Positions 32,494 through 44,217 of a DNA stretch of 64,000 nt are shown piece after piece; position 1 is the stretch's first letter, and every line of letters begins with the position of its first letter. The position numbers were made by a program, and so were the translations under genes. Under the pieces are notes generated by a model that worked only from the letters and a program-made list of their open reading frames with translations, did not search any database and was not told where the DNA came from. The stretch comes from Lepidodermella squamata. Its lineage: Eukaryota; Animalia; Gastrotricha. The stretch lies in contig JBLDXI010000042.1 of NCBI GenBank assembly GCA_047495785.1, positions 2,604,001 through 2,668,000 on the forward strand, read 5' to 3'.

Positions 32494-35400
32494 ATGGCTT
32501 GGATTGACTCAAGCTGTCCGCTCAGAAATGCTAAGAGAGTGCAGTTCGGCATTTTATCGCCAGAAGAAATTGTAAGTTGACTACTCATTGTTAAAATGGC
32601 AACTGATTATTGATCTTTTTCCAGCGGCGGATGTCAGTCACAGAAGGTGGTATCACCTTTCCTGGCACTATGGAGGCTGGCAAGCCGAAGCTTTGCGGTT
32701 TGATGGATCCTCGGCAGGGTGTCATTGAGCGAACGGGCAAATGTTTGACTTGCTCATGTGATATGAACACATGTCCTGGTCATTTTGGCCACGTTGAACT
32801 GGCCCGCCCGGTTTACCACATTGGCTGGCTTACAAAAACTATAAAAATTCTTCGCTGCGTATGCTTTTACTGCGCAAAAATGCTCGTCGACTCAGTAAGC
32901 GTTGTTACGTGTAATGTGCTAACTATTTTATCGGTTTTGTTGTTGTCAGGATAGCCCTGCAATTAAAGAAGCTATTGCAAAGACTCGACTAAGCCCGCGT
33001 CGTCGACTCGCCCTCGTATATGAGCTGTGCAAATCCAGAAATATTTGCGAAGGCGCAGAAGAAGACGTACCAGGTGGTCAGCCGGTGAAGGAGGAGGAAG
33101 ACGATTTTGGCCTAAAGAAAAAGAAGAAGGGCTTTGTGAAAGGTGGCTGCGGGCGCTATCAACCTCAGTACCGCCGTCAAGGCCTCGAGTTGACAGCAGA
33201 ATGGAAACATCAAAACGATGACACCCAAGAGCGTAAAATAATTTTAACTGCCGAGCGCGTTCTCGAAGTATTTCGGCGTGTGTCTGACATTGACTGCTTC
33301 GCATTGGGTATGGACCCGCGTTGGGCTCGTCCCGATTGGATGATAATATCGGTTCTTCCCGTTGCACCATTGTGCGTTCGACCTTCAGTTGTCATGTTCG
33401 GCACGACTCGAAATCAAGACGATTTGACTCACAAATTGGCTGATATAGTCAAGTGGAACAATCAGTTGAAGAGGAATGAACAAAATGGTGCAGCTGCACA
33501 TATCATTGCTGAGGATGTAAAGATGCTTCAATATCACGTAGCCACGCTTTTCGACAATGAAATTCCCGGTCTTCCTAAGGCTACACAAAAATCCGGTCGT
33601 CCCCTCAAATCAATCAAACAAAGATTAAAGGGGAAAGAAGGTCGTATTCGAGGCAATTTGATGGGTAAACGTGTCGATTTCTCCGGTCGTACTGTCATCA
33701 CGCCTGATCCGAATCTACGGATTGATCAAGTCGGCGTTCCTCGAACAATTGCTCAGAATTTGACGTTTCCTGAGATTGTCTCCCCGCTCAACATGGACTA
33801 CCTGCGAGAGCTCGTAGAACGTGGTCCGAATCAATATCCTGGTGCTCGATACATCATTCGAGATGATGGTACTCGAATCGATTTGCGATTCAATCCTCGC
33901 CCTGCTGATCTCCACCTTCAACCCGGTTATAAGGTGGAACGACATATGCGAGATGGCGATGCTGTCGTTTTCAATCGTCAGCCCACTCTTCACAAGATGT
34001 CTATGATGTGTCACAGAGTCAAGGTGCTTCCATGGTCTACTTTCCGCCTTAATCTTTCAGTAACAACCCCGTACAACGCCGATTTCGACGGTGACGAAAT
34101 GAATCTTCATTTGCCTCAATCATACGAGGCGAGAGCTGAAATTCTCGAGTTGGCTTTGGTACCTCGTCTCATCATCACACCCCAAGCCAATCGACCTGTC
34201 ATGGGTATTGTGCAAGATACGCTGACAGCTTCCAACAAAATGACAAAGCGCGACGTTTTCATCGAAAAAGAAAACGTGATGAACCTGCTGCTTCAAATTC
34301 CTCATTGGAACGGCATTATCCCCCAGCCGGCTATTCTCAAGCCAAAACCACTATGGACCGGTAAACAGCTGTTCTCACTGACCATTCCTGGCAAGGTTAA
34401 CTGCGTCAGAACCCACAACGCCCATCCTGACGATGAAGATCGAGGGCCATACAAGTGGCTATCCCCGGGTGATACGAAGGTCCTAATCGAAAACGGCGAG
34501 CTGATTTGCGGAATGTTGGACAAACGCACACTCGGTCCGTCTAGCGGTTCTCTCATGCACATTGTCGCTTTGGAGTTGACCCACGTTGAAGCCGGCGAGT
34601 TTTACGGCCACATTCAAACCCTCATCAACAACTGGCTGCTAATCGATGGTCACACAATCGGTATTGGTGACACTATCGCCGACCCTCAGACCTACGAGGA
34701 GATCCAGGAAACGATTAAATCCGCCAAAAATCGTGTGTATGAAGTCATTGAAAAAGCGCATCACGACGACTTGGAGCCCACCCCTGGTAACACGTTGCGT
34801 CAAACTTTCGAGAACACCGTGAATCACCTCTTGAACGACGCCCGTGACAAAACTGGTGGTTCTGCTCAGCGTTCGTTGTCAGAGTTCAACAACTTCAAGG
34901 CGATGGTCGTTTCCGGTGCGAAAGGTTCGAAAATTAACATTTCTCAGGTCATCGCCTGTGTCGGTCAGCAAAACGTCGAAGGTAAACGTATTCCGTTCGG
35001 CTTCTCGCGGCGTACCCTGCCTCATTTCATCAAGGACGACTACGGTCCTGAGTCGAAGGGTTTCGTCGAGAACTCTTACCTCGCCGGTCTGACCCCGTCC
35101 GAATTCTTCTTCCACGCCATGGGAGGTCGTGAAGGTCTTATCGATACCGCCGTCAAAACTGCCGAAACCGGTTACATCCAACGTCGTCTCATCAAGTCCA
35201 TGGAGTCAGTCATGGTCAAATACGACGGAACTATTCGTAACCAGCTCGAGCAGATGGTTCAATTCCGTTACGGTGAAGATGGCCTCGACGCGACTCGAGT
35301 CGAGTTCCAGAACTTGCTATCGTACAAGCCTAGCGACAAAGCCTTCGAAAAATCGTTCAGGTTCGACCTGAATAATCAAAAGCAGTTGAATGACGTGTTC

Positions 35401-38400
35401 AACGACGATCTTGTGCGAGAGATTTCAGGTGACACCAAACTCCCTCTTGAAATCGACCTCGAATTCGAGCAGTTATCAAAGGATCGTCGCGAGCTGCGAA
35501 TGTTGTTCAAAAATGGAAACGCTCGAGTTGTCCTACCGTGTAATATCGAACGTTTAGTTTGGAACGCGCAGAAAATTTTCAAAATCGACACCCGCCGTCC
35601 TACAGATCTCAACCCACTTCAAGTCGTGCAAAGTGTCCGAGACCTTTGCGAGCGACTGGTCATCGTGAAGGGCGAGGACCGTTTGAGTAAAGAAGCTAAC
35701 CGAAACGCAACTTTGCTGATTGATACTCACATTCGATCATCACTGTGCACGAAACGAGCCTGCGTCGACTATCGGTTGAGCACTGCGGCCTTCGAATGGC
35801 TGGTTGGTGAAATTGAGTCGCGCTTCAACCAGGCCATGGCCCATCCGGGTGAAATGGTTGGTCCCCTCGCCGCCCAGTCTCTCGGTGAGCCGGCTACTCA
35901 GATGACACTGAACACTTTCCACTACGCCGGTGTGTCGGCTAAGAACGTAACACTCGGTGTGCCGCGTTTGAAGGAAATCATCAACGTGTCGAAGAAGCCG
36001 AAGACCCCCTCGCTCACTGTTTTCTTGACTGGTCAGGCTGCTAAAGACGCGGAACGAGCCAAGGATGTTCTCTGTCGACTTGAGCACACAACTCTTCGAA
36101 AAGTCACAGCAAACACGGCGATTTACTACGATCCAGATCCTAAGAACACGGTACGTATTTATGGTTTAGAAATTTCCACTGTATTTAAGCTGAATATTTC
36201 ACCGCCCAACTTGAACTTTTTTAAGGAGGATTTAAAAAATAATAATTATCAACAGGGTTGCTACGTGAAATGTTTAGCTTAAAGTGGAAATTCCGCATTA
36301 GACTTTCTGTGATGAAATGTGTGACTTGCCCTCTATCTGATCAAACTTGATTATTAAGTCTAATTAACCTGATTTTAAAATTGAAAATTTTAACCAATTT
36401 TTCCATATTTTCTTGCGAAAATAACCTTTTTTACGTTTTAATTTCAGCTGATTGCCGAGGATCAAGATTTCGTGTCGATTTACTACGAGATGTCTGAAGT
36501 CGACCCGTCTCGGTTGTCGCCATGGTTGCTACGTATCGAGCTCGATCGCAAGCGTATGACCGACAAAAAGCTGACAATGGAACAGATTTCGGAGAAAATT
36601 TCCCTCGCTTTCGGCGAAGATCTTAACTGCATGTTCAACGACGATAACGCTGAGAAGCTCATCTTGCGTATTCGCATCACCTCGAACCCTGAAGAGAAGG
36701 TCGCCGAGCAAATGGATAACGATGGCGGGCAGGTCGTGGTCGAATCCGCGAATCGCATGGACGACTACATGTTCTTGCGGTGTATCGAGGCTAATCTGCT
36801 CAGTGATTTGACCCTCCAGGGCATCGAAGCTATTTCGAAGGTCTACATGCATCTTCCGAAAACTGAAGACAAGAAGCGCATCGTTATTACCGACACTGGT
36901 GAATTCAAGGGCATTGCCGAGTGGATTCTCGAAACCGACGGTACTGCGTTGCAGCAGGTCTTGAGTGAGCGTGACGTGAATAACTCGAGAACATTCACCA
37001 ACGACGTCGTTGAAATTTTTTCGGTACTCGGTATCGAAGCTGTGCGTAAATCCATCGAAAACGAGATGAATAACGTCATTTCTTTCGACGGCTCGTACGT
37101 CAACTACCGTCATTTAGCCCTGCTTTGCGAGGTTATGACTGCAAAGGGCCATTTGATGGCTATTACCCGTCACGGTATCAACCGGCAAGACACTGGTGCG
37201 CTGGCGAGGTGCTCGTTCGAAGAAACTGTCGACATTTTGTTGGACGCGGCGAGTCATGGTGAAAGTGACCCGTTGCGTGGTGTCTCCGAAAACATTATGA
37301 TGGGTCAACTTGGTCGGTTGGGCACCGGGTCGTTCGAGTTACTACTCGACGCTGAGAAGTGTAGACAAGCCATGGAAATTCCGATGGGACCTGGTTTGGG
37401 AATGGGCATGACTGGTATGCTGGAGGCCGGTCCGAGCCAAATCACCCCCTGGCACGACTTGTCAGCTCAAACCCCTGCCTATGTCGGCGATATGTTCCCT
37501 GGTGGCGCTACCCCTGGTGGTTTTGGGGTGGGTGCCTTCTCACCCAGCGCTCAGTCTGAAGTCGGTCTTTCGCCCGGCTACAGCCCTGGTTGGTCACCAT
37601 CCGGCGGCATGTCACCCTCAGCGAGCCCGATGAGCCCTTATGTACCCAGCCCGGGGCAACATTCGCCATCTTATTCGCCGACTTCGCCTCTATACATGCC
37701 GCAATCACCGGCTAGCCCTGGTCTACCGGGTGGTCTCGCCTCGCCGACTTACAGCCCGAGCTACTCGCCATCTACGCCAGCCTATCCACCGGCTAGCCCT
37801 CACTACAGCCCGACCAGCCCGAGTTACAGTCCAACTTCGCCATCATACAGCCCGACGTCGCCTTCCTACTCGCCATCGAGTCCTAAATTCAGCCCGACCA
37901 GTCCGACTTACAGTCCAACTAGCCCGAGCTACAGCCCCACATCGCCGTCGTACTCGCCTTCTAGTCCGAAGTTCAGTCCGACTAGTCCTACCTACAGCCC
38001 GACAAGGTAATTTGAATTCATAATTCTACCCAAAATGACGCTTTTATGATGAGATTTTTGACTTGCCCTCTATTAGTTTACCGATGATTATTAAGTCCTT
38101 ACTGATTCAAGCTTTATACTCAATTTTCGAAGCGTGTAATTTTGCATGGTTTAATGCGATTTTTTTTCAAATTTTAAGCCCGTCGTACAGTCCGACTTCG
38201 CCTTCTTACTCGCCATCGAGTCCGAAATTCAGTCCGACAAGTCCGACCTACAGTCCAACAAGGTAATTATTTCAGCGATTTTCGTGTACATATTCAGAAC
38301 TTATTTTCCTATTTTAGCCCGACGTACAGCCCAACATCGCCGTCTTATTCACCGTCGAGCCCGAATTTCAGCCCTACTTCTCCGACTTACAGCCCAACCA

Positions 38401-38826
38401 GGTTTGTATTCGATTACCTTTCAGTAACAGATTGCCGATTTTATGATGATTTTTCAAGACTTGCCCTATATGAATCATTTGATTATTAGTCCTCATAACT
38501 GATAGAATTCTTTTTAGTAGAGATTTATGGCTTTTTGTATCTTTGTCAAATTTTTTATTCCAATTTTCTGATTTTCCAGTCCGGTTTATTCACCAACATC
38601 TCCCGCGGTCTATTCGCCATCGTCACCTGCCGCGTATTCACCGACGTACTCGCCAACTTCGCCGCGTTACACACCTGGCTCGCCTGAATACAGCCCATCT
38701 AATATAACATCGCCAGCCTACACTCCTCGCACTCCGGCGACACCCGGCCAACCGGAGGCAAGACGCGACGGCGCCGGTCCATCCGGAACCGGAGGTCGAG
38801 GCGCTCAGGGCGGAGCGAAACGTTGA
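32494..38826 (+). CDS. POLR2A: RNA polymerase II largest subunit; exons approx. 32494-32571, 32625-32895, 32950-36150, 36448-38006, 38179-38262, 38318-38401, 38580-38826
   Basis: [37 protein letters not shown] active site, [11 protein letters not shown] trigger loop, YSPTSPS heptads; AATAAA at 39108. Confidence 0.99.
36309..36372 (+). ncRNA. Box C/D snoRNA copy 1 (type A), RPB1 intron 3
   Basis: GTGATGA...GACTTGCCCTCTAT-CTGA...TTGATTA...AAGTC...CTGA; D box 75 nt from the 3' splice site. Confidence 0.88.
38046..38105 (+). ncRNA. Box C/D snoRNA copy 2 (type C, degenerate D'), RPB1 intron 4
   Basis: ATGATGA...GACTTGCCCTCTAT-TAGT...ATGATTA...AAGTC...CTGA; 73 nt from the 3' splice site. Confidence 0.85.
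38443..38502 (+). ncRNA. Box C/D snoRNA copy 3 (type B), RPB1 intron 6
   Basis: ATGATGA...AGACTTGCCCTAT-ATGA...TTGATTA...AGTCC...CTGA; 77 nt from the 3' splice site. Confidence 0.88.
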
Positions 38827-39266
38827 TTTGATCCGCAACTTGTATAATCTTAACTTCTAAATTTTCTAGACTTCACACCAGAACCTTGAAATGTTTAGAG
38901 CTGCTTGGTTGTCTATTTCACTGCTCCTCATCTCACACGCCTGCGTTTCTTTAGTTGACGTCGCGGCGATGTGTTGATTTCTACGCTTAGGGATCATGCT
39001 TTCTTTCGAGCGCAATATTCAACCTAACAACTGCTCTTGTCTTACTGCATTCAATTAATTCATTCATTTTGTGATTACAGTTTTCGTATACGGTGTCTTA
39101 TCTTGACAATAAAGATCCATCACCATCTTTGGATAAATCCAGGGTGACTTTTTATTAATTTTTTTACGGTGTATTTCTAGGTTAATAATTTGGTTTTTAC
39201 GCTACGCATGAAGTTGGGCCGAAATCAAGGTATTTTATTTATCGAGGTGAAACGAGTTGTTTGATA

Positions 39267-39329
39267 GTGATGATATTCGTGACTTGCCCTCTATCTGAGC
39301 TTCGGCTTTGATAATTAAGTCTAATCTGA
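39267..39329 (+). ncRNA. Box C/D snoRNA copy 4 (type A)
   Basis: GTGATGA, guide GACTTGCCCTCTAT, D' CTGA, AGC-TTCG-GCT hairpin, C' TTGATAA, D CTGA. Confidence 0.9.
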
Positions 39330-39479
39330 AAACAGAGGGAAAGAAATGAATTTTTCCGACAACGTTTCGGTGGCTAAATTTTATTTGTGTACAGGTTCAA
39401 TTGTTGCTGATGGAAATAGAAAATTGGCGTAAATACGAGGTAAGATTTAAAAACATCTCGATTAGCAAAACTAGAGTTT

Positions 39480-39542
39480 ATGATGATATTCGTGACTTGC
39501 CCTCTATCTGAGTCAAGACCTTGACTTTTAAGTCTTTTCTGA
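39480..39542 (+). ncRNA. Box C/D snoRNA copy 5 (type A)
   Basis: ATGATGA, GACTTGCCCTCTAT-CTGA, terminal CTGA; nearly identical to copy 12. Confidence 0.9.
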
Positions 39543-39704
39543 TTAGCGCATGTATCGCCTTGATTTGAGAGGTTTGAGCGCAGTAATTGATTGTTTTTTC
39601 AACGTTTTATCAGACTGCAAACGGCGTTGTTCCTGATCAAGTTGGTCTGAAATCTCAAGGTGATTTTTCAATAAAACTTGTAGGATATTGCGGTGTTTTA
39701 TAAC

Positions 39705-39766
39705 CTGATGAATTTGAAGACTTGCCCTATATGAAAAAATCTTGATTATCAGTCCACAAATACTGA
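39705..39766 (+). ncRNA. Box C/D snoRNA copy 6 (type B)
   Basis: CTGATGA, AGACTTGCCCTAT-ATGA, TTGATTA, CTGA. Confidence 0.87.
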
Positions 39767-40075
39767 AAATACTTATAAATGCTTGGAAGGAAGAAGAAAC
39801 TCATGTTCTCGATTTTTACACGGTTTTTAATTTGCAGTTTTTCGGGCTTGAAGATCGTTGAGAAAAAGGCGGATCTACCCTCGAACGAGCTTGATGGCGA
39901 ATGGCAATTAAAAGAGGGCTTGATTGAAGCTCTTGAAAAATGAAGTTGCGATCAAAGAAACATCGACAGAAATATTTGCGACCTGTGTCGACTTCTCAAG
40001 TTCAGCGGATCTTGAGTTCAATGGAATCCTATGATGAGGTAATGCTCGGAAATATTCGTATTATCAATCGCAATT

Positions 40076-40135
40076 ATGATGAGAATTTCGACTTGCCCTC
40101 TCTTAGTAAATCAATGATTATTAAGTCTTAACTGA
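40076..40135 (+). ncRNA. Box C/D snoRNA copy 7 (type C)
   Basis: ATGATGA, GACTTGCCCTCTCT-TAGT, ATGATTA, CTGA; resembles copy 2. Confidence 0.85.
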
Positions 40136-40317
40136 ATGAATTTGAAACCTAGCTTTATCGAACGGATTATTTGTGGACCTTACGAGAACAAACCTTGTTA
40201 TTTCCAGGTGGATGCTGAACAAACTAGATCTGTTGGATCGAGAGCGACAAATGATCGTTCCCAAATGTCAAGCGAAAACGGTACGCATGAGATGTTTTAA
40301 TTGGATTTTATGCTAAA

Positions 40318-40380
40318 GTGATGAGATTTGTGACTTGCCCTCTATCTGAACTTTGGTTTTGATATTTAAGTCTACTCTGA
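40318..40380 (+). ncRNA. Box C/D snoRNA copy 8 (type A)
   Basis: GTGATGA, GACTTGCCCTCTAT-CTGA, TTGATAT, CTGA. Confidence 0.9.
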
Positions 40381-40562
40381 CTGCAGAAGTCATCTCGCAC
40401 TAGCATAGGTGGCTAAATATTTTATTTTTCTAGTGTTCTTCTCTCTTTTTCAGGCCGCTTGCGTTTATCCCGAAAACCAAGGCCAAATCGTCACACAGGT
40501 CAAGGCGTGGCATACAATGTAAGCTCCTTTGTCTTGCTATATTGAAGATACCATTTTACATT

Positions 40563-40624
40563 ATGATGATTTAAAAGACTTGCCCTATATGATGTTAGTG
40601 ATTTATAGTCCAAAATTAAGCTGA
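40563..40624 (+). ncRNA. Box C/D snoRNA copy 9 (type B)
   Basis: ATGATGA, AGACTTGCCCTAT-ATGA, GTGATTT, CTGA. Confidence 0.88.
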
Positions 40625-40782
40625 ATTCAATCTATTGGAGCACTTCATCTCAACAATTTGATTCATTTCTGAAAATATTTCATTTTTCTTTCAGATTGCC
40701 ACAAATCGTCCATGCGATGCGCAAAATTCGATTCTTCTTCATGAGATGTAAGTTTCAAGGATAACTTCCCGAGTTTTATTCT

Positions 40783-40847
40783 GTGATGATATTCGTGACT
40801 TGCCCTCTATCTGAGCTTTATAGCTTTGATAATTAAGTCGATCCTGA
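40783..40847 (+). ncRNA. Box C/D snoRNA copy 10 (type A)
   Basis: GTGATGA, GACTTGCCCTCTAT-CTGA, TTGATAA, CTGA. Confidence 0.9.
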
Positions 40848-41008
40848 TAACTTTCCTCAATTTGTTTCATCAGGAAATTGATCAGTTTTATCTCAAGCTC
40901 ATTTTGTAATCTTTTTCAGGATTCGATTGAGCTCGGTTCGGCTACTGATTCCAGCTGATTCATGAAGGTAGGCTAAACTTCAATTACATTAATTCACGGC
41001 GTTTTTTC

Positions 41009-41068
41009 ATGATGAGTTTCAAGACTTGCCCTATATGAATCCTTGATTATTAGTCCACATTTTACTGA
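41009..41068 (+). ncRNA. Box C/D snoRNA copy 11 (type B)
   Basis: ATGATGA, AGACTTGCCCTAT-ATGA, TTGATTA, CTGA. Confidence 0.9.
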
Positions 41069-41214
41069 TCCTGTGTGAAAATTCATCATTTCTTGCGCTT
41101 TATACCAATATTAATTGCGTTTTTCTTTTCAGGGACAGCCTCTGTATTCATCTTCGTGCGAATTTGCTACTTTCAAGGTAATTTGCGCTAGATATTCATT
41201 GCCTAATTTTTTAA

Positions 41215-41277
41215 ATGATGATATTCGTGACTTGCCCTCTATCTGAGTCAAGACTTTGACTTTTAAGTCTTTTCTGA
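41215..41277 (+). ncRNA. Box C/D snoRNA copy 12 (type A)
   Basis: ATGATGA, GACTTGCCCTCTAT-CTGA, terminal CTGA; nearly identical to copy 5. Confidence 0.9.
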
Positions 41278-41454
41278 TGAAAAGTTACTCTTTTTCACCT
41301 CGTGAATAATTGTTTCCTGGAATAACTTTGATATTTTTTTGTTCAGGTATGCGATGGTCGAAATCAAAGAGACGATGAAGCCAAGGAGCTTTCAAAATGC
41401 AATCTACATTGCCAAGGTGAGCTTTAAACACGATACCCAATTTTTAGAAGTAAA

Positions 41455-41514
41455 ATGATGATTTATAAGACTTGCCCTATATGAAAACATTGATTAGTAG
41501 TCCTTCAGATCTGA
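41455..41514 (+). ncRNA. Box C/D snoRNA copy 13 (type B)
   Basis: ATGATGA, AGACTTGCCCTAT-ATGA, TTGATTA, CTGA. Confidence 0.9.
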
Positions 41515-41660
41515 TTTACCTATCGAATTGATTTTTCAACTGGAAGAAGTATGAGATTTTCTCTAAGTTACCTATTCTTGTTTTCCAGACAACGGACCAG
41601 CTTGGCTAATTTATAAAAAGGTAAATGTTTTTAAATTTCTAATCAATTAAGTCATTTTTG

Positions 41661-41723
41661 GTGATGATATTCGTGACTTGCCCTCTATCTGAGCTTCGGC
41701 CCTGATAATTAAGTCTACTCTGA
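41661..41723 (+). ncRNA. Box C/D snoRNA copy 14 (type A)
   Basis: GTGATGA, GACTTGCCCTCTAT-CTGA, GC-TTCG-GC hairpin, CTGATAA, CTGA; close to copy 4. Confidence 0.9.
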
Positions 41724-41880
41724 TTTACGAGCTTTACGTTATTTAATTATTCGTAAATATTTCTACCATTGGCTTAATCGCTTCTGATTTTGCAGATTTG
41801 ATTCATCACAATGCCACCCAAAACTATTCTACATGCTTCGAGGTAAATAAAGAAAATATATGCCAGCTTTTTCCTAAAAA

Positions 41881-41941
41881 ATGATGATTTAAAAGACTTG
41901 CCCTATATGAAAACACTGATTAGTAGTCCGTTTCAATCTGA
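41881..41941 (+). ncRNA. Box C/D snoRNA copy 15 (type B)
   Basis: ATGATGA, AGACTTGCCCTAT-ATGA, CTGATTA, CTGA; close to copy 13. Confidence 0.9.
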
Positions 41942-44217
41942 TTTTATCAATCTAAGAGATATAAAAAATAAGGAACCAATTTCAGATTTTTCCAATGCTA
42001 ATATTCCATTATTTTTTCCAGACATGGCGATAAGCGAAAAATAACTGTCATCTCTGATTTCTTTGATTTGAAAAGCCTAATTTATGTAATATTTTCGGAA
42101 TAAAATGAAATCGCTCAATTTTTTGGTTAGTTGTTTACTAAACATGAGGAAGTATCGCGTATAAGGCCATTAAACCAGGCTGGTTCGCGAATAACACGCC
42201 ACACTTGCACAAACACGCGAAAGCGGAATCATCGTTTTCACGTTTCTGCTTGATGCTGACACGAGAGGATGCAGATACATGACAGTCAACCGCAAGAGTC
42301 TCGTTTCTGTGTGTGTTTGTAGCCTTCCCTAACAATTTATAGCAAGAGCAAATGTGACACAGACACAAAACGTAGGGCCGCTTAAGTATAAACACTTATG
42401 CTTAGTATTCTCGTGATGACCTCTTCGGCAGCGAAAATTTGCGCGCAACAGCTATTGTTCATCACAGGGCCAGGACAGGCCGAAAGCAGCAACAGCAGAA
42501 TACACACATACAAGACGAGAACCGTTTGGCGGCTCATCGCAACCACAACGACGGCACGTTTTATTTACCCTGGTGGCATCATGGCTCCTAAATGCGAGTG
42601 TATAATTACCTTCCCGGCGCGATGTATAGTTTATTAGGCTGTCTTACCTTTCCGCAGCAGCTGCCTCAATTTAAAGATGATACCTGTCTGTATAAATTCA
42701 AATTACAGTTCCGCATCGCCAAATTTTTTGATAAGAATTTCTTTGCCCGAATAATTATACATCTATATGCCAATCACGTGCTAGCCGTTATCGCAGATGT
42801 GGTATATCTACGTACCATGTTGTTCGGAAAAATGAGGTAGAGGCAACAACAGTTGACCGGTTTTTATTCGGCGGAATCGATGCGAATTGTTTACATTATT
42901 TATACTGTAGCTGCAGAAATTTACACCCTTAAAAAGGCGTCGTGAGGCGCAGCCCACCTTGCGTTCTTATTTTCGCTATTAGGTGTGTCGCTCTCTCTGC
43001 AAAATGCGCGTGTCTGATGACAGCGTAAGTTTAAGCCGCGCAATAAATCGTCGTCCCTGCTTACTATTAATAATATTAATCATGCGTAGGTGAAACTTGG
43101 TTTGATAAATAATGAATAAGTGCTTTTGTTGTGCTGTGTTTCGGCCCATTCCTACTGCGCAAATGCCAGCACCTGTGTTCTTCACACACACGCTCAAGCG
43201 TATATATAGGCTATTTATACATTTCTTGGCCGTGAACACTTTGTGCGGAGAAATATCTCAGCCTTGAGGTGACTGCGCTTACAACAACCACAAAGCCGCT
43301 TTATGCTTGTACGCAGTCCAGTAAAACATGTAATGAGTATGCGCAGGTCACATCTCCAAGCTTTGTGTCATCGGTTTTCGATGAATAAGCGCCTCTGAAT
43401 TATTCTTATAAAAGTATCCACACAGTAAAATGCTTCGTTAGTACAGCGTCTTTGAGGTTAAATTTATTGCTTACTTGAATTCCTCTTACACTAGTTGTCT
43501 AAGGAGGCGGCATTAATAACCGTGACCCTGACTCAATGGAAACGTTTTAATGCGGTGAATAAGCGTGGCACTCCTTATAGAATAATAATGTTGTAGAAAG
43601 GTGGTTTTTTTCAATTGTTGAAAAAAACAAGCGCGATCGAAAATTAAGGTGACTCTTTTAATTAATTCCGCAATATCATTTTTTCGCACATGCTTGTTGA
43701 GCCCTCATTTACATTTACCTATACCCGGCTTGTGGACAAAGCTTATAAAACCAGTGCCGCGTGGCCATTGAGGCGTCGGTTATTTGCGAGTCCATGATGT
43801 TGGCCGCGCCGTTAGTCAAAGGCGGCGTCGCTGATGCTTGATGCGTTTTGTTTATTACCTGCTATTATGAATTAAGTCATTAGCTGTATACACCGTTTTC
43901 TGTCGTGCCAAATGAGCCTGATGCTATAGTTTAAGCACGCCTTAACCAAATTTTCGTATTTTTCGCGCATTATTGCGCTTTATTATCCGCTTGCATTTCA
44001 CCTGTGACGTAATTTACGCGCGCTAATGTCTTCAAAAAATTGGCGCCTCGGTGGTTCAGTCGACCTTGCGGGCGCACCGCCACTTCTCGTTGTCACCAGC
44101 CCAGGAGGACGTCCTTCTATTAGTAGCCCTTTTTATAGGCAACAACACTCTAATCCTAATAATTCGACCAGCTGTTGCCAACTGAAGAGTGATTCGAAGA
44201 GCAACGTCGCTGTCAAG

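What the first reader, a model, noticed from the sequence alone, without database searches (positions are those of the whole stretch)
39267..41941. Guide-register shift: subtypes predict two methylation sites 2 nt apart
Seen: type B (6 copies) reads AGACTTGCCCTAT-ATGA, type A (7 copies) GACTTGCCCTCTAT-CTGA, type C (2 copies) GACTTGCCCTCT(A/C)T-TAGT. Applying the D'+5 rule to the consensus 18S, type B targets the middle G of GGAGGGC, which by my recollection corresponds to human 18S Gm601 (SNORD103/SNORD85 family), while type A targets the A two bases upstream, a site I do not know as a conserved methylation. Type C has no canonical D' and may be non-methylating or shifted by one base. Inference: duplication plus a 2-nt indel created a new rRNA modification site.
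Basis: partly seen in the sequence, partly recalled or inferred. Interest (0 to 1): 0.78.

Follow-up and report, generated by a model that had tools for sequence, protein, structure and literature searches.

The report
Two-register SNORD103-like snoRNA array
Fifteen small guide RNAs in the introns of two neighbouring genes all pair with one stretch of this invertebrate's 18S ribosomal RNA, and a 2-base shift in half of them predicts a second, so far unmapped, ribose methylation two bases from a conserved one; the prediction is sound, but this way of gaining a site is already known.

Summary
Twelve lie in 39267-41941. The other three lie in RPB1 introns at 36309-38502.

The animal's own 18S reads GUGGAGGGCAAGUCUGG. 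The fifth-base rule puts type A on A546 and type B on G548. Type B has the same register as the Rfam SNORD103 consensus, which targets human Gm601. The human site list I read has no site at A599, the equivalent of A546.

Both subtypes look selected:
- Guide plus D' never varies within a type.
- Spacers vary, and intron flanks are at random identity.
- Every copy sits about 72 nt upstream of its 3' splice site.

Type C has no recognisable D' box.

Methylation and expression could not be tested, and no relative's genome was found. Human SNORD45A/B and SNORD45C already show paralogues whose sites lie 2 nt apart, so this is a new variant of a known kind.

The scan had already noted this same array in another reading (s1-422657), and another 15-copy snoRNA host gene elsewhere in this genome (s1-398054).

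The parts
36309..36372 (+). type A snoRNA, in RPB1 intron 36151-36447
   Evidence: guide+D' GACTTGCCCTCTAT|CTGA; 75 nt from the 3' splice site
38046..38105 (+). type C snoRNA, in RPB1 CTD intron 38007-38178
   Evidence: D' position reads TAGT
38443..38502 (+). type B snoRNA, in RPB1 CTD intron 38402-38579
   Evidence: AGACTTGCCCTAT|ATGA
39267..39329 (+). type A snoRNA, host intron 39230-39394
39480..39542 (+). type A snoRNA, host intron 39440-39613
39705..39766 (+). type B snoRNA, host intron 39660-39837
40076..40135 (+). type C snoRNA, host intron 40039-40207
40318..40380 (+). type A snoRNA, host intron 40281-40453
40563..40624 (+). type B snoRNA, host intron 40519-40694
40783..40847 (+). type A snoRNA, host intron 40748-40919
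41009..41068 (+). type B snoRNA, host intron 40968-41132
41215..41277 (+). type A snoRNA, host intron 41178-41346
41455..41514 (+). type B snoRNA, host intron 41417-41588
41661..41723 (+). type A snoRNA, host intron 41621-41795
41881..41941 (+). type B snoRNA, host intron 41843-42021 (3' splice site less certain: 41985 or 42021)
39230..42104 (+). spliced non-coding host gene: 12 GT-AG introns of 165-179 nt separated by exons of 32-201 nt, with AATAAA at 42099-42104
   Evidence: stop codons in all three frames of exons 39838-40038, 40920-40967 and 42022-42125
36448..38826 (+). 3' part of the RPB1 gene (Rpb1 domains 5-7 and CTD heptads), stop codon at 38824-38826; its introns host three of the snoRNAs
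   Evidence: (best hits are RPB1; Pfam PF04998, PF04990, PF05001)

Best explanation
This is one family of 15 splicing-dependent, intron-encoded box C/D methylation-guide snoRNAs, related in guide and target to vertebrate SNORD103. All use the guide upstream of box D' to pair with 18S helix 18 (nt 542-556). Type B keeps the ancestral register and should direct fibrillarin to G548, the equivalent of human Gm601. Type A has two more guide bases between CCCU and a canonical CUGA D' box. It forms a 14-bp duplex that reaches the D' box, and its fifth base pairs with A546, so it should add Am546 two bases upstream. Type C has the type A guide but no recognisable D' box, so its activity is open. The sequences, pairings, intron geometry and conservation pattern are shown. 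Expression, snoRNP assembly and both methylations are inferred.
For: - **Unit structure.** All 15 units have box C and box D. Type A has D' CUGA and type B has AUGA, and C' is UGAxxx in every copy.
- **Targets.** A scan anchored on the D' box, over 18S, 5.8S, 28S, 5S and both ITS, gives one clear best site per type: A546 for A and C, G548 for B. Runners-up are much weaker, and the box D guides have no shared target.
- **Duplex energies.** A is -25.7 kcal/mol and B is -21.0, against shuffled-guide means of -13.1 and -8.7.
- **Register.** The Rfam SNORD103 consensus has the same core and the type B register. A metagenomic SNORD103-like RNA (L034, 29.4 bits) also has D' AUGA in that register. The human numbering is confirmed.
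- **Selection.** Flanks are 0.50-0.51 identical, against 0.49 for random 60-mers, while snoRNAs are 0.80-0.82 identical within a type. Variable columns number 0/18 (A) and 0/16 (B) in guide plus D', against 10/17 and 15/19 in spacers (p = 1e-4 and 2e-6).
- **C'/D' structure.** The type A linker hairpin keeps pairing through compensatory changes.
- **Position in the intron.** Copies end 64-80 nt (mean 72, sd 4) before the 3' splice site.
- **Experimental precedent.** In yeast, a base inserted between guide and D' moves the methylated nucleotide by one (PMC5389607).
Against: - There are no RNA-seq or methylation data for this animal.
- No Rfam family reaches its gathering score. SNORD103 scores 18.5 bits on a type A copy and gives no hit on type B.
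- Type B's D' box is non-canonical.
- A and B bind the same rRNA stretch, so they must compete.
- Some copy pairs are 95-98% identical, so part of the invariance may reflect recent copying or gene conversion and not selection.
- No orthologue was found to show that the A/B split is old.
Confidence: 0.6

Rival explanations
1. Only one subtype is an active methylation guide, so the rRNA carries one mark, not two. Either type B's AUGA D' box is inactive and the site has moved from G548 to A546, or type A is a tolerated but inactive variant.
For: B's D' box departs from CUGA. The human list has only the G site. No methylation data exist for this animal.
Against: Both subtypes keep invariant guides and boxes in 6-7 copies while their spacers diverge. 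L034 shows AUGA in another SNORD103-like RNA. B's C' position 6 is always U, which can pair with the A at D' position 1. Divergent C'/D' motifs are often active in yeast (PMC3116282). Type A has a canonical CUGA and a structured C'/D' motif.
Confidence: 0.2
2. The register cannot be read from the sequence this simply. Unusual C'/D' motifs can let one snoRNA methylate two nearby nucleotides or shift the site by one, so A and B may overlap in target or give other sites such as G547 or G549.
For: van Nues and Watkins showed that snR13, snR48 and U18 each methylate two nucleotides through alternative C'/D' structures. Use of the sixth base has been reported in Dictyostelium and zebrafish.
Against: In that study the ambiguity was tied to a C as the last guide base before a D' box lacking its 5' C. 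Here the last guide base is U in both A and B, which is the preferred base in active guides.
Confidence: 0.1
3. The family acts mainly as a pre-rRNA folding chaperone for helix 18 (the 530-loop pseudoknot region), and the high copy number serves dosage. Methylation would be secondary or absent. Type C would be a pure base-pairing form.
For: There are 15 copies for one rRNA stretch. Type C has no D' box yet keeps the guide in both copies. The invariant AGUC element lies outside guide and boxes.
Against: The exact, type-specific spacing between guide and D' is conserved, which matters only for choosing the methylated base. The vertebrate counterpart is a methylation guide.
Confidence: 0.07

Closest known systems
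Vertebrate SNORD103/SNORD85 (Rfam RF00188), the guide for human 18S Gm601
   Same: Box C/D snoRNA with a D' guide core ACUUGCCCU pairing with GGAGGGCAAGU of helix 18. Type B has the same register: three bases between CCC and D', with the fifth base on the middle G.
   Different: The score is below the Rfam gathering threshold (18.5 against 45 bits). The units are shorter (60-65 against about 83 nt) and lack the CUGGC/GCCAG terminal stem of the consensus. There are 15 copies in RPB1 and a non-coding host. Type A is shifted by 2 nt, and type C has no D' box.
Human SNORD45A/B (18S Um172) and SNORD45C (18S Cm174)
   Same: Paralogous box C/D snoRNAs of one family assigned to sites 2 nt apart in the same rRNA stretch (table in PMC11550049).
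   Different: A different rRNA region. In that case both sites have been mapped experimentally; here they are only predicted.
Yeast snR13, snR48 and U18 (two sites from one guide region)
   Same: Two closely spaced 2'-O-methyl groups in one target region, set by details of the D' box and the guide's 3' end.
   Different: There, one snoRNA forms two alternative C'/D' structures. Here, two separate paralogue sets each have a fixed register.
Multi-snoRNA non-coding host genes (the UHG/GAS5 type)
   Same: One snoRNA per intron, short exons full of stop codons, and each snoRNA at a fixed distance upstream of the 3' splice site.
   Different: All 12 introns carry paralogues of a single family aimed at one rRNA helix. 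The array continues from the introns of the upstream protein-coding gene RPB1.

Membership tests
box C/D methylation-guide snoRNA | Terminal box C (RUGAUGA) and box D (CUGA) | tested here: met
   15/15 have UGAUGA and CUGA. The base before UGAUGA is a purine in 14 copies and C in one.
box C/D methylation-guide snoRNA | Internal D' and C' boxes | tested here: inconclusive
   A has CUGA with UGAUAA-like C' and a linker hairpin with compensatory changes. B has AUGA with UGAUUA. C has UAGU at the D' position, with no GA dinucleotide.
box C/D methylation-guide snoRNA | At least 10 bp of guide-rRNA duplex next to D or D', with the fifth base Watson-Crick paired | tested here: met
   A forms 14 bp (12 Watson-Crick and 2 G.U) with 18S 542-555. 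B forms 11 Watson-Crick bp with 546-556. Each is the single best site across the rRNAs.
box C/D methylation-guide snoRNA | Intronic position about 70-80 nt upstream of the 3' splice site (an established feature of animal intronic C/D snoRNAs, cited from memory of Hirose and Steitz 2001) | tested here: met
   64-80 nt, mean 72, sd 4, for 15/15 copies.
box C/D methylation-guide snoRNA | Stable expression, binding of fibrillarin/Nop56/Nop58/Snu13, and methylation of the target | not testable with these tools
   No RNA or modification data are available.
SNORD103/SNORD85 (RF00188) | Score at or above the Rfam gathering threshold (45 bits) | tested here: not met
   No hit at the gathering threshold. 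A type A copy scores 18.5 bits, and type B gives no hit at E<=10.
SNORD103/SNORD85 (RF00188) | D' guide that places the fifth base on the middle G of 18S GGAGGGC (human G601) | tested here: met
   Met by type B (G548). Not met by type A (A546). Undefined for type C.
SNORD103/SNORD85 (RF00188) | Terminal stem CUGGC...GCCAG of the family consensus | tested here: not met
   Flanks of the 15 copies are unrelated and show no shared stem. The metagenomic L034 does have it.

The most novel reading that the evidence does not exclude
This animal's small ribosomal subunit carries a lineage-specific Am at 18S A546 in helix 18, next to the decoding-centre 530 loop and two bases from the conserved Gm. The site would have arisen from a 2-nt register shift in a SNORD103-like guide. 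The near 1:1 alternation of A and B copies in one host transcript would keep the two competing guides in balance, so ribosomes could carry one or both marks. Type C, which has no D' box, could act as a non-methylating competitor.
Probability: 0.5. Interest if true: 0.5.

Novelty: new variant of a known kind. Interest (0 to 1): 0.4.

Why it matters
If both marks exist, this locus shows how an rRNA modification site is born: duplication, a 2-nt change next to D', and retention of both forms. It gives a precise, cheap prediction (Am546 and Gm548) in a poorly studied invertebrate lineage. The site lies in helix 18, beside the decoding centre. It does not change the rules, because register-shifted paralogues are already documented (SNORD45A/B against SNORD45C).

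Tried and rejected
- **Rfam.** At gathering thresholds there was no hit. At permissive thresholds only weak, generic C/D hits appeared; SNORD103 was the one that shared the guide.
- **Relatives through RPB1.** The word search with exon 36448-38004 gave best identities of 64-73% and no close relative. Two contigs with the same exon span (L016, L017) hold no such snoRNA.
- **Metagenome pattern scan.** Only L034 is a credible SNORD103-like RNA. Other candidates (L019, L021 family, L023, L028, L059, L097) got no Rfam support and remain unverified.
- **Scan of bacterial and archaeal genome contigs.** One chance hit.
- **Box D guides.** They have no shared rRNA target. The type C match to 18S G1524 runs through its own C' box and was rejected.
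- **Literature on Am at this position.** Nothing found. The planarian map is sparse (10 full sites in 18S). The Drosophila site tables are not held as text.
- **Human sequence.** No contig looked human.

Full report
**Observation**

The 9-mer ACTTGCCCT occurs exactly 15 times in the window, always on the + strand, between 36324 and 41904. The stated range holds 12 copies. The other three (A at 36309, C at 38046, B at 38443) lie in the last introns of the gene for the largest RNA polymerase II subunit. That gene's domain 5-7 exon and CTD heptads are plain, and its stop codon is at 38824-38826.

A genome-wide pattern search found no further copies except in an inverted duplicate of RPB1 about 40 kb away.

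**Setting**

The 12 downstream copies sit one per intron in a chain of GT-AG introns of 165-179 nt. The exons between them are 32-201 nt. Three exons have stop codons in all three frames, so the host is non-coding. I checked exons singly and did not build or search a joined model.

Every snoRNA starts 35-45 nt after the 5' splice site. The one exception is the longer RPB1 intron 36151-36447. Every snoRNA ends 64-80 nt (mean 72, sd 4) before the 3' splice site. This is the spacing expected for splicing-coupled assembly of animal intronic box C/D snoRNPs (Hirose and Steitz 2001, cited from memory).

**Target**

The genome's rDNA was fetched. Its 18S is 1817 nt, with GGAGGGCAAGUC at 544-555.

- **Type A.** The 14 guide bases before CUGA pair with G542-C555 (12 Watson-Crick and 2 G.U). 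The fifth base, U, pairs with A546.
- **Type B.** Eleven Watson-Crick pairs cover A546-U556. The fifth base, C, pairs with G548.

A scan anchored on the box, over all rRNAs and both ITS, gives these as the single best sites. The guides before box D have no common target. Duplex energies are -25.7 (A) and -21.0 (B) kcal/mol, against shuffled means of -13.1 and -8.7.

**Relation to the known family**

The Rfam SNORD103 consensus reads CACUUGCCCUCA|CUGA. It has three bases between CCC and D', as type B does. Human G602 and C603 form the helix 18 bulge and Gm601 precedes them, so Gm601 is the middle G. It is assigned to SNORD85/SNORD103A/B.

Type B is therefore the functional counterpart of SNORD103. 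It does not qualify as a member at the Rfam threshold. A metagenomic RNA (L034) scores 29.4 bits against SNORD103 and also has D' AUGA in the type B register. This shows that AUGA occurs in this family.

Type A's target corresponds to human A599. The human list goes from Am590 to Gm601 with nothing between.

**Are both subtypes maintained?**

- The 60 nt flanking the copies are 0.50-0.51 identical, which is the level of random 60-mers from the region (0.49). The snoRNAs are 0.80-0.82 identical within a type.
- Within the snoRNAs, guide plus D' has 0/18 (A) and 0/16 (B) variable columns. The spacers have 10/17 and 15/19 (Fisher p = 1e-4 and 2e-6).
- The type A linker forms a hairpin that keeps its pairing through compensatory changes.
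- In type B, C' position 6 is always U. It can pair with the A at D' position 1, where the canonical motif has G-C. This last point is inference.
- The last guide base is U in both types. This is the preferred base in active yeast guides and not the C that blurs site choice.

The inverted RPB1 duplicate gives a natural comparison. It is 95% identical to the window copy in the main block and has a frameshift. Its introns are 88-90% identical to those of the window copy. In the duplicate:

- the A copy has two changes, both in the guide;
- the C copy is split by an insertion of about 250 nt;
- the B copy is unchanged except for 2 nt in a variable spacer.

**Caveats**

- Two pairs of copies (39480/41215 and 39267/41661) are 95-98% identical, yet sit in introns with unrelated flanks. 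The identity ends at box C and box D. Some homogeneity may therefore come from gene conversion or RNA-mediated copying and not from purifying selection.
- No relative's genome was found, so the age and direction of the split rest only on the outgroup register (SNORD103 and L034).
- Nothing here shows expression or methylation.

**Type C**

Both copies have UAGU where D' should be, with no GA dinucleotide, although their linkers and spacers differ. Whether they methylate A546, act without methylating, or are decaying cannot be decided.

**Unexplained element**

AGUC after C' is invariant in all 15 copies. It reads UUAAGUC in types A and C and AGUCC in type B. It can pair with GACU(UG) of the same RNA's guide. 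It can also pair, weakly, with 18S 535-542 just 5' of the main duplex. That would resemble the 'extra base-pairing' that van Nues et al. describe in the second guide region of single-guide snoRNAs, a list that includes human U103. I could not decide between the two.

**Novelty**

Paralogues of one snoRNA family that specify sites 2 nt apart are documented: SNORD45A/B for Um172 and SNORD45C for Cm174. The dependence of the site on the number of bases before D' has been shown experimentally. This locus is a new variant of a known kind. Its new points are a predicted new site in helix 18 and an unusual layout: 15 copies for one helix, spanning RPB1 and a dedicated host gene, with A and B alternating.

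Earlier notes of this scan call the organism probably a gastrotrich (s1-398054). I did not test that.

Noticed in passing
G000:C42:2683000-2692000 (L014, minus strand), about 15-24 kb beyond the window's end: Inverted duplicate of RPB1, 95% identical to window 33101-38031, with a frameshift and changes at conserved residues, so probably a pseudogene. Its intronic A copy has a mutated guide, its C copy is split by an insertion of about 250 nt, and its B copy is intact.
   Followed up: partly
window 39063-39137 (+): Relic resembling snoZ196/R39/R59 (26.6 bits, below threshold). It keeps the 28S guide ATCACCATCTTT but has a degenerate box C and no CTGA box D. It lies between the RPB1 stop codon and the first host intron.
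   Followed up: no
window 39480-39542 vs 41215-41277, and 39267-39329 vs 41661-41723: These snoRNA pairs are 98% and 95% identical, while their intron flanks are at random identity. The identity stops at box C and box D, which suggests short-tract gene conversion or RNA-mediated copying.
   Followed up: partly
window 39230-42021: Very uniform host introns (165-179 nt), each with its snoRNA 35-45 nt from the 5' splice site and about 72 nt from the 3' splice site.
   Followed up: yes
L138 6626-6744 (minus strand), i.e. G000:C130: A 5S rRNA gene lies on the opposite strand about 230 nt downstream of the 28S gene, so 5S is linked to the rDNA unit.
   Followed up: no
window 37806-38262 and RPB1 introns 38007-38178, 38247-38316, 38402-38579: The CTD-coding region is cut by several short introns and contains 84-nt and 21-nt tandem repeats that encode non-canonical heptads (e.g. 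[14 protein letters not shown]).
   Followed up: no
L034 55-126 (metagenome contig VSKX01067565.1): SNORD103-like snoRNA (29.4 bits, E 0.0013) with the family's GGC/GCC terminal stem and D' AUGA in the Gm601 register. The source organism is unknown.
   Followed up: partly
L021, L029, L031, L067, L070 (soil metagenome contigs): These share the element CTGATGA-TCCRGACTTGCCCT-CTGA, which has 13 nt complementary to the same 18S stretch. Its register would put the fifth base on the C of GGGC. It is not confirmed as a snoRNA.
   Followed up: partly
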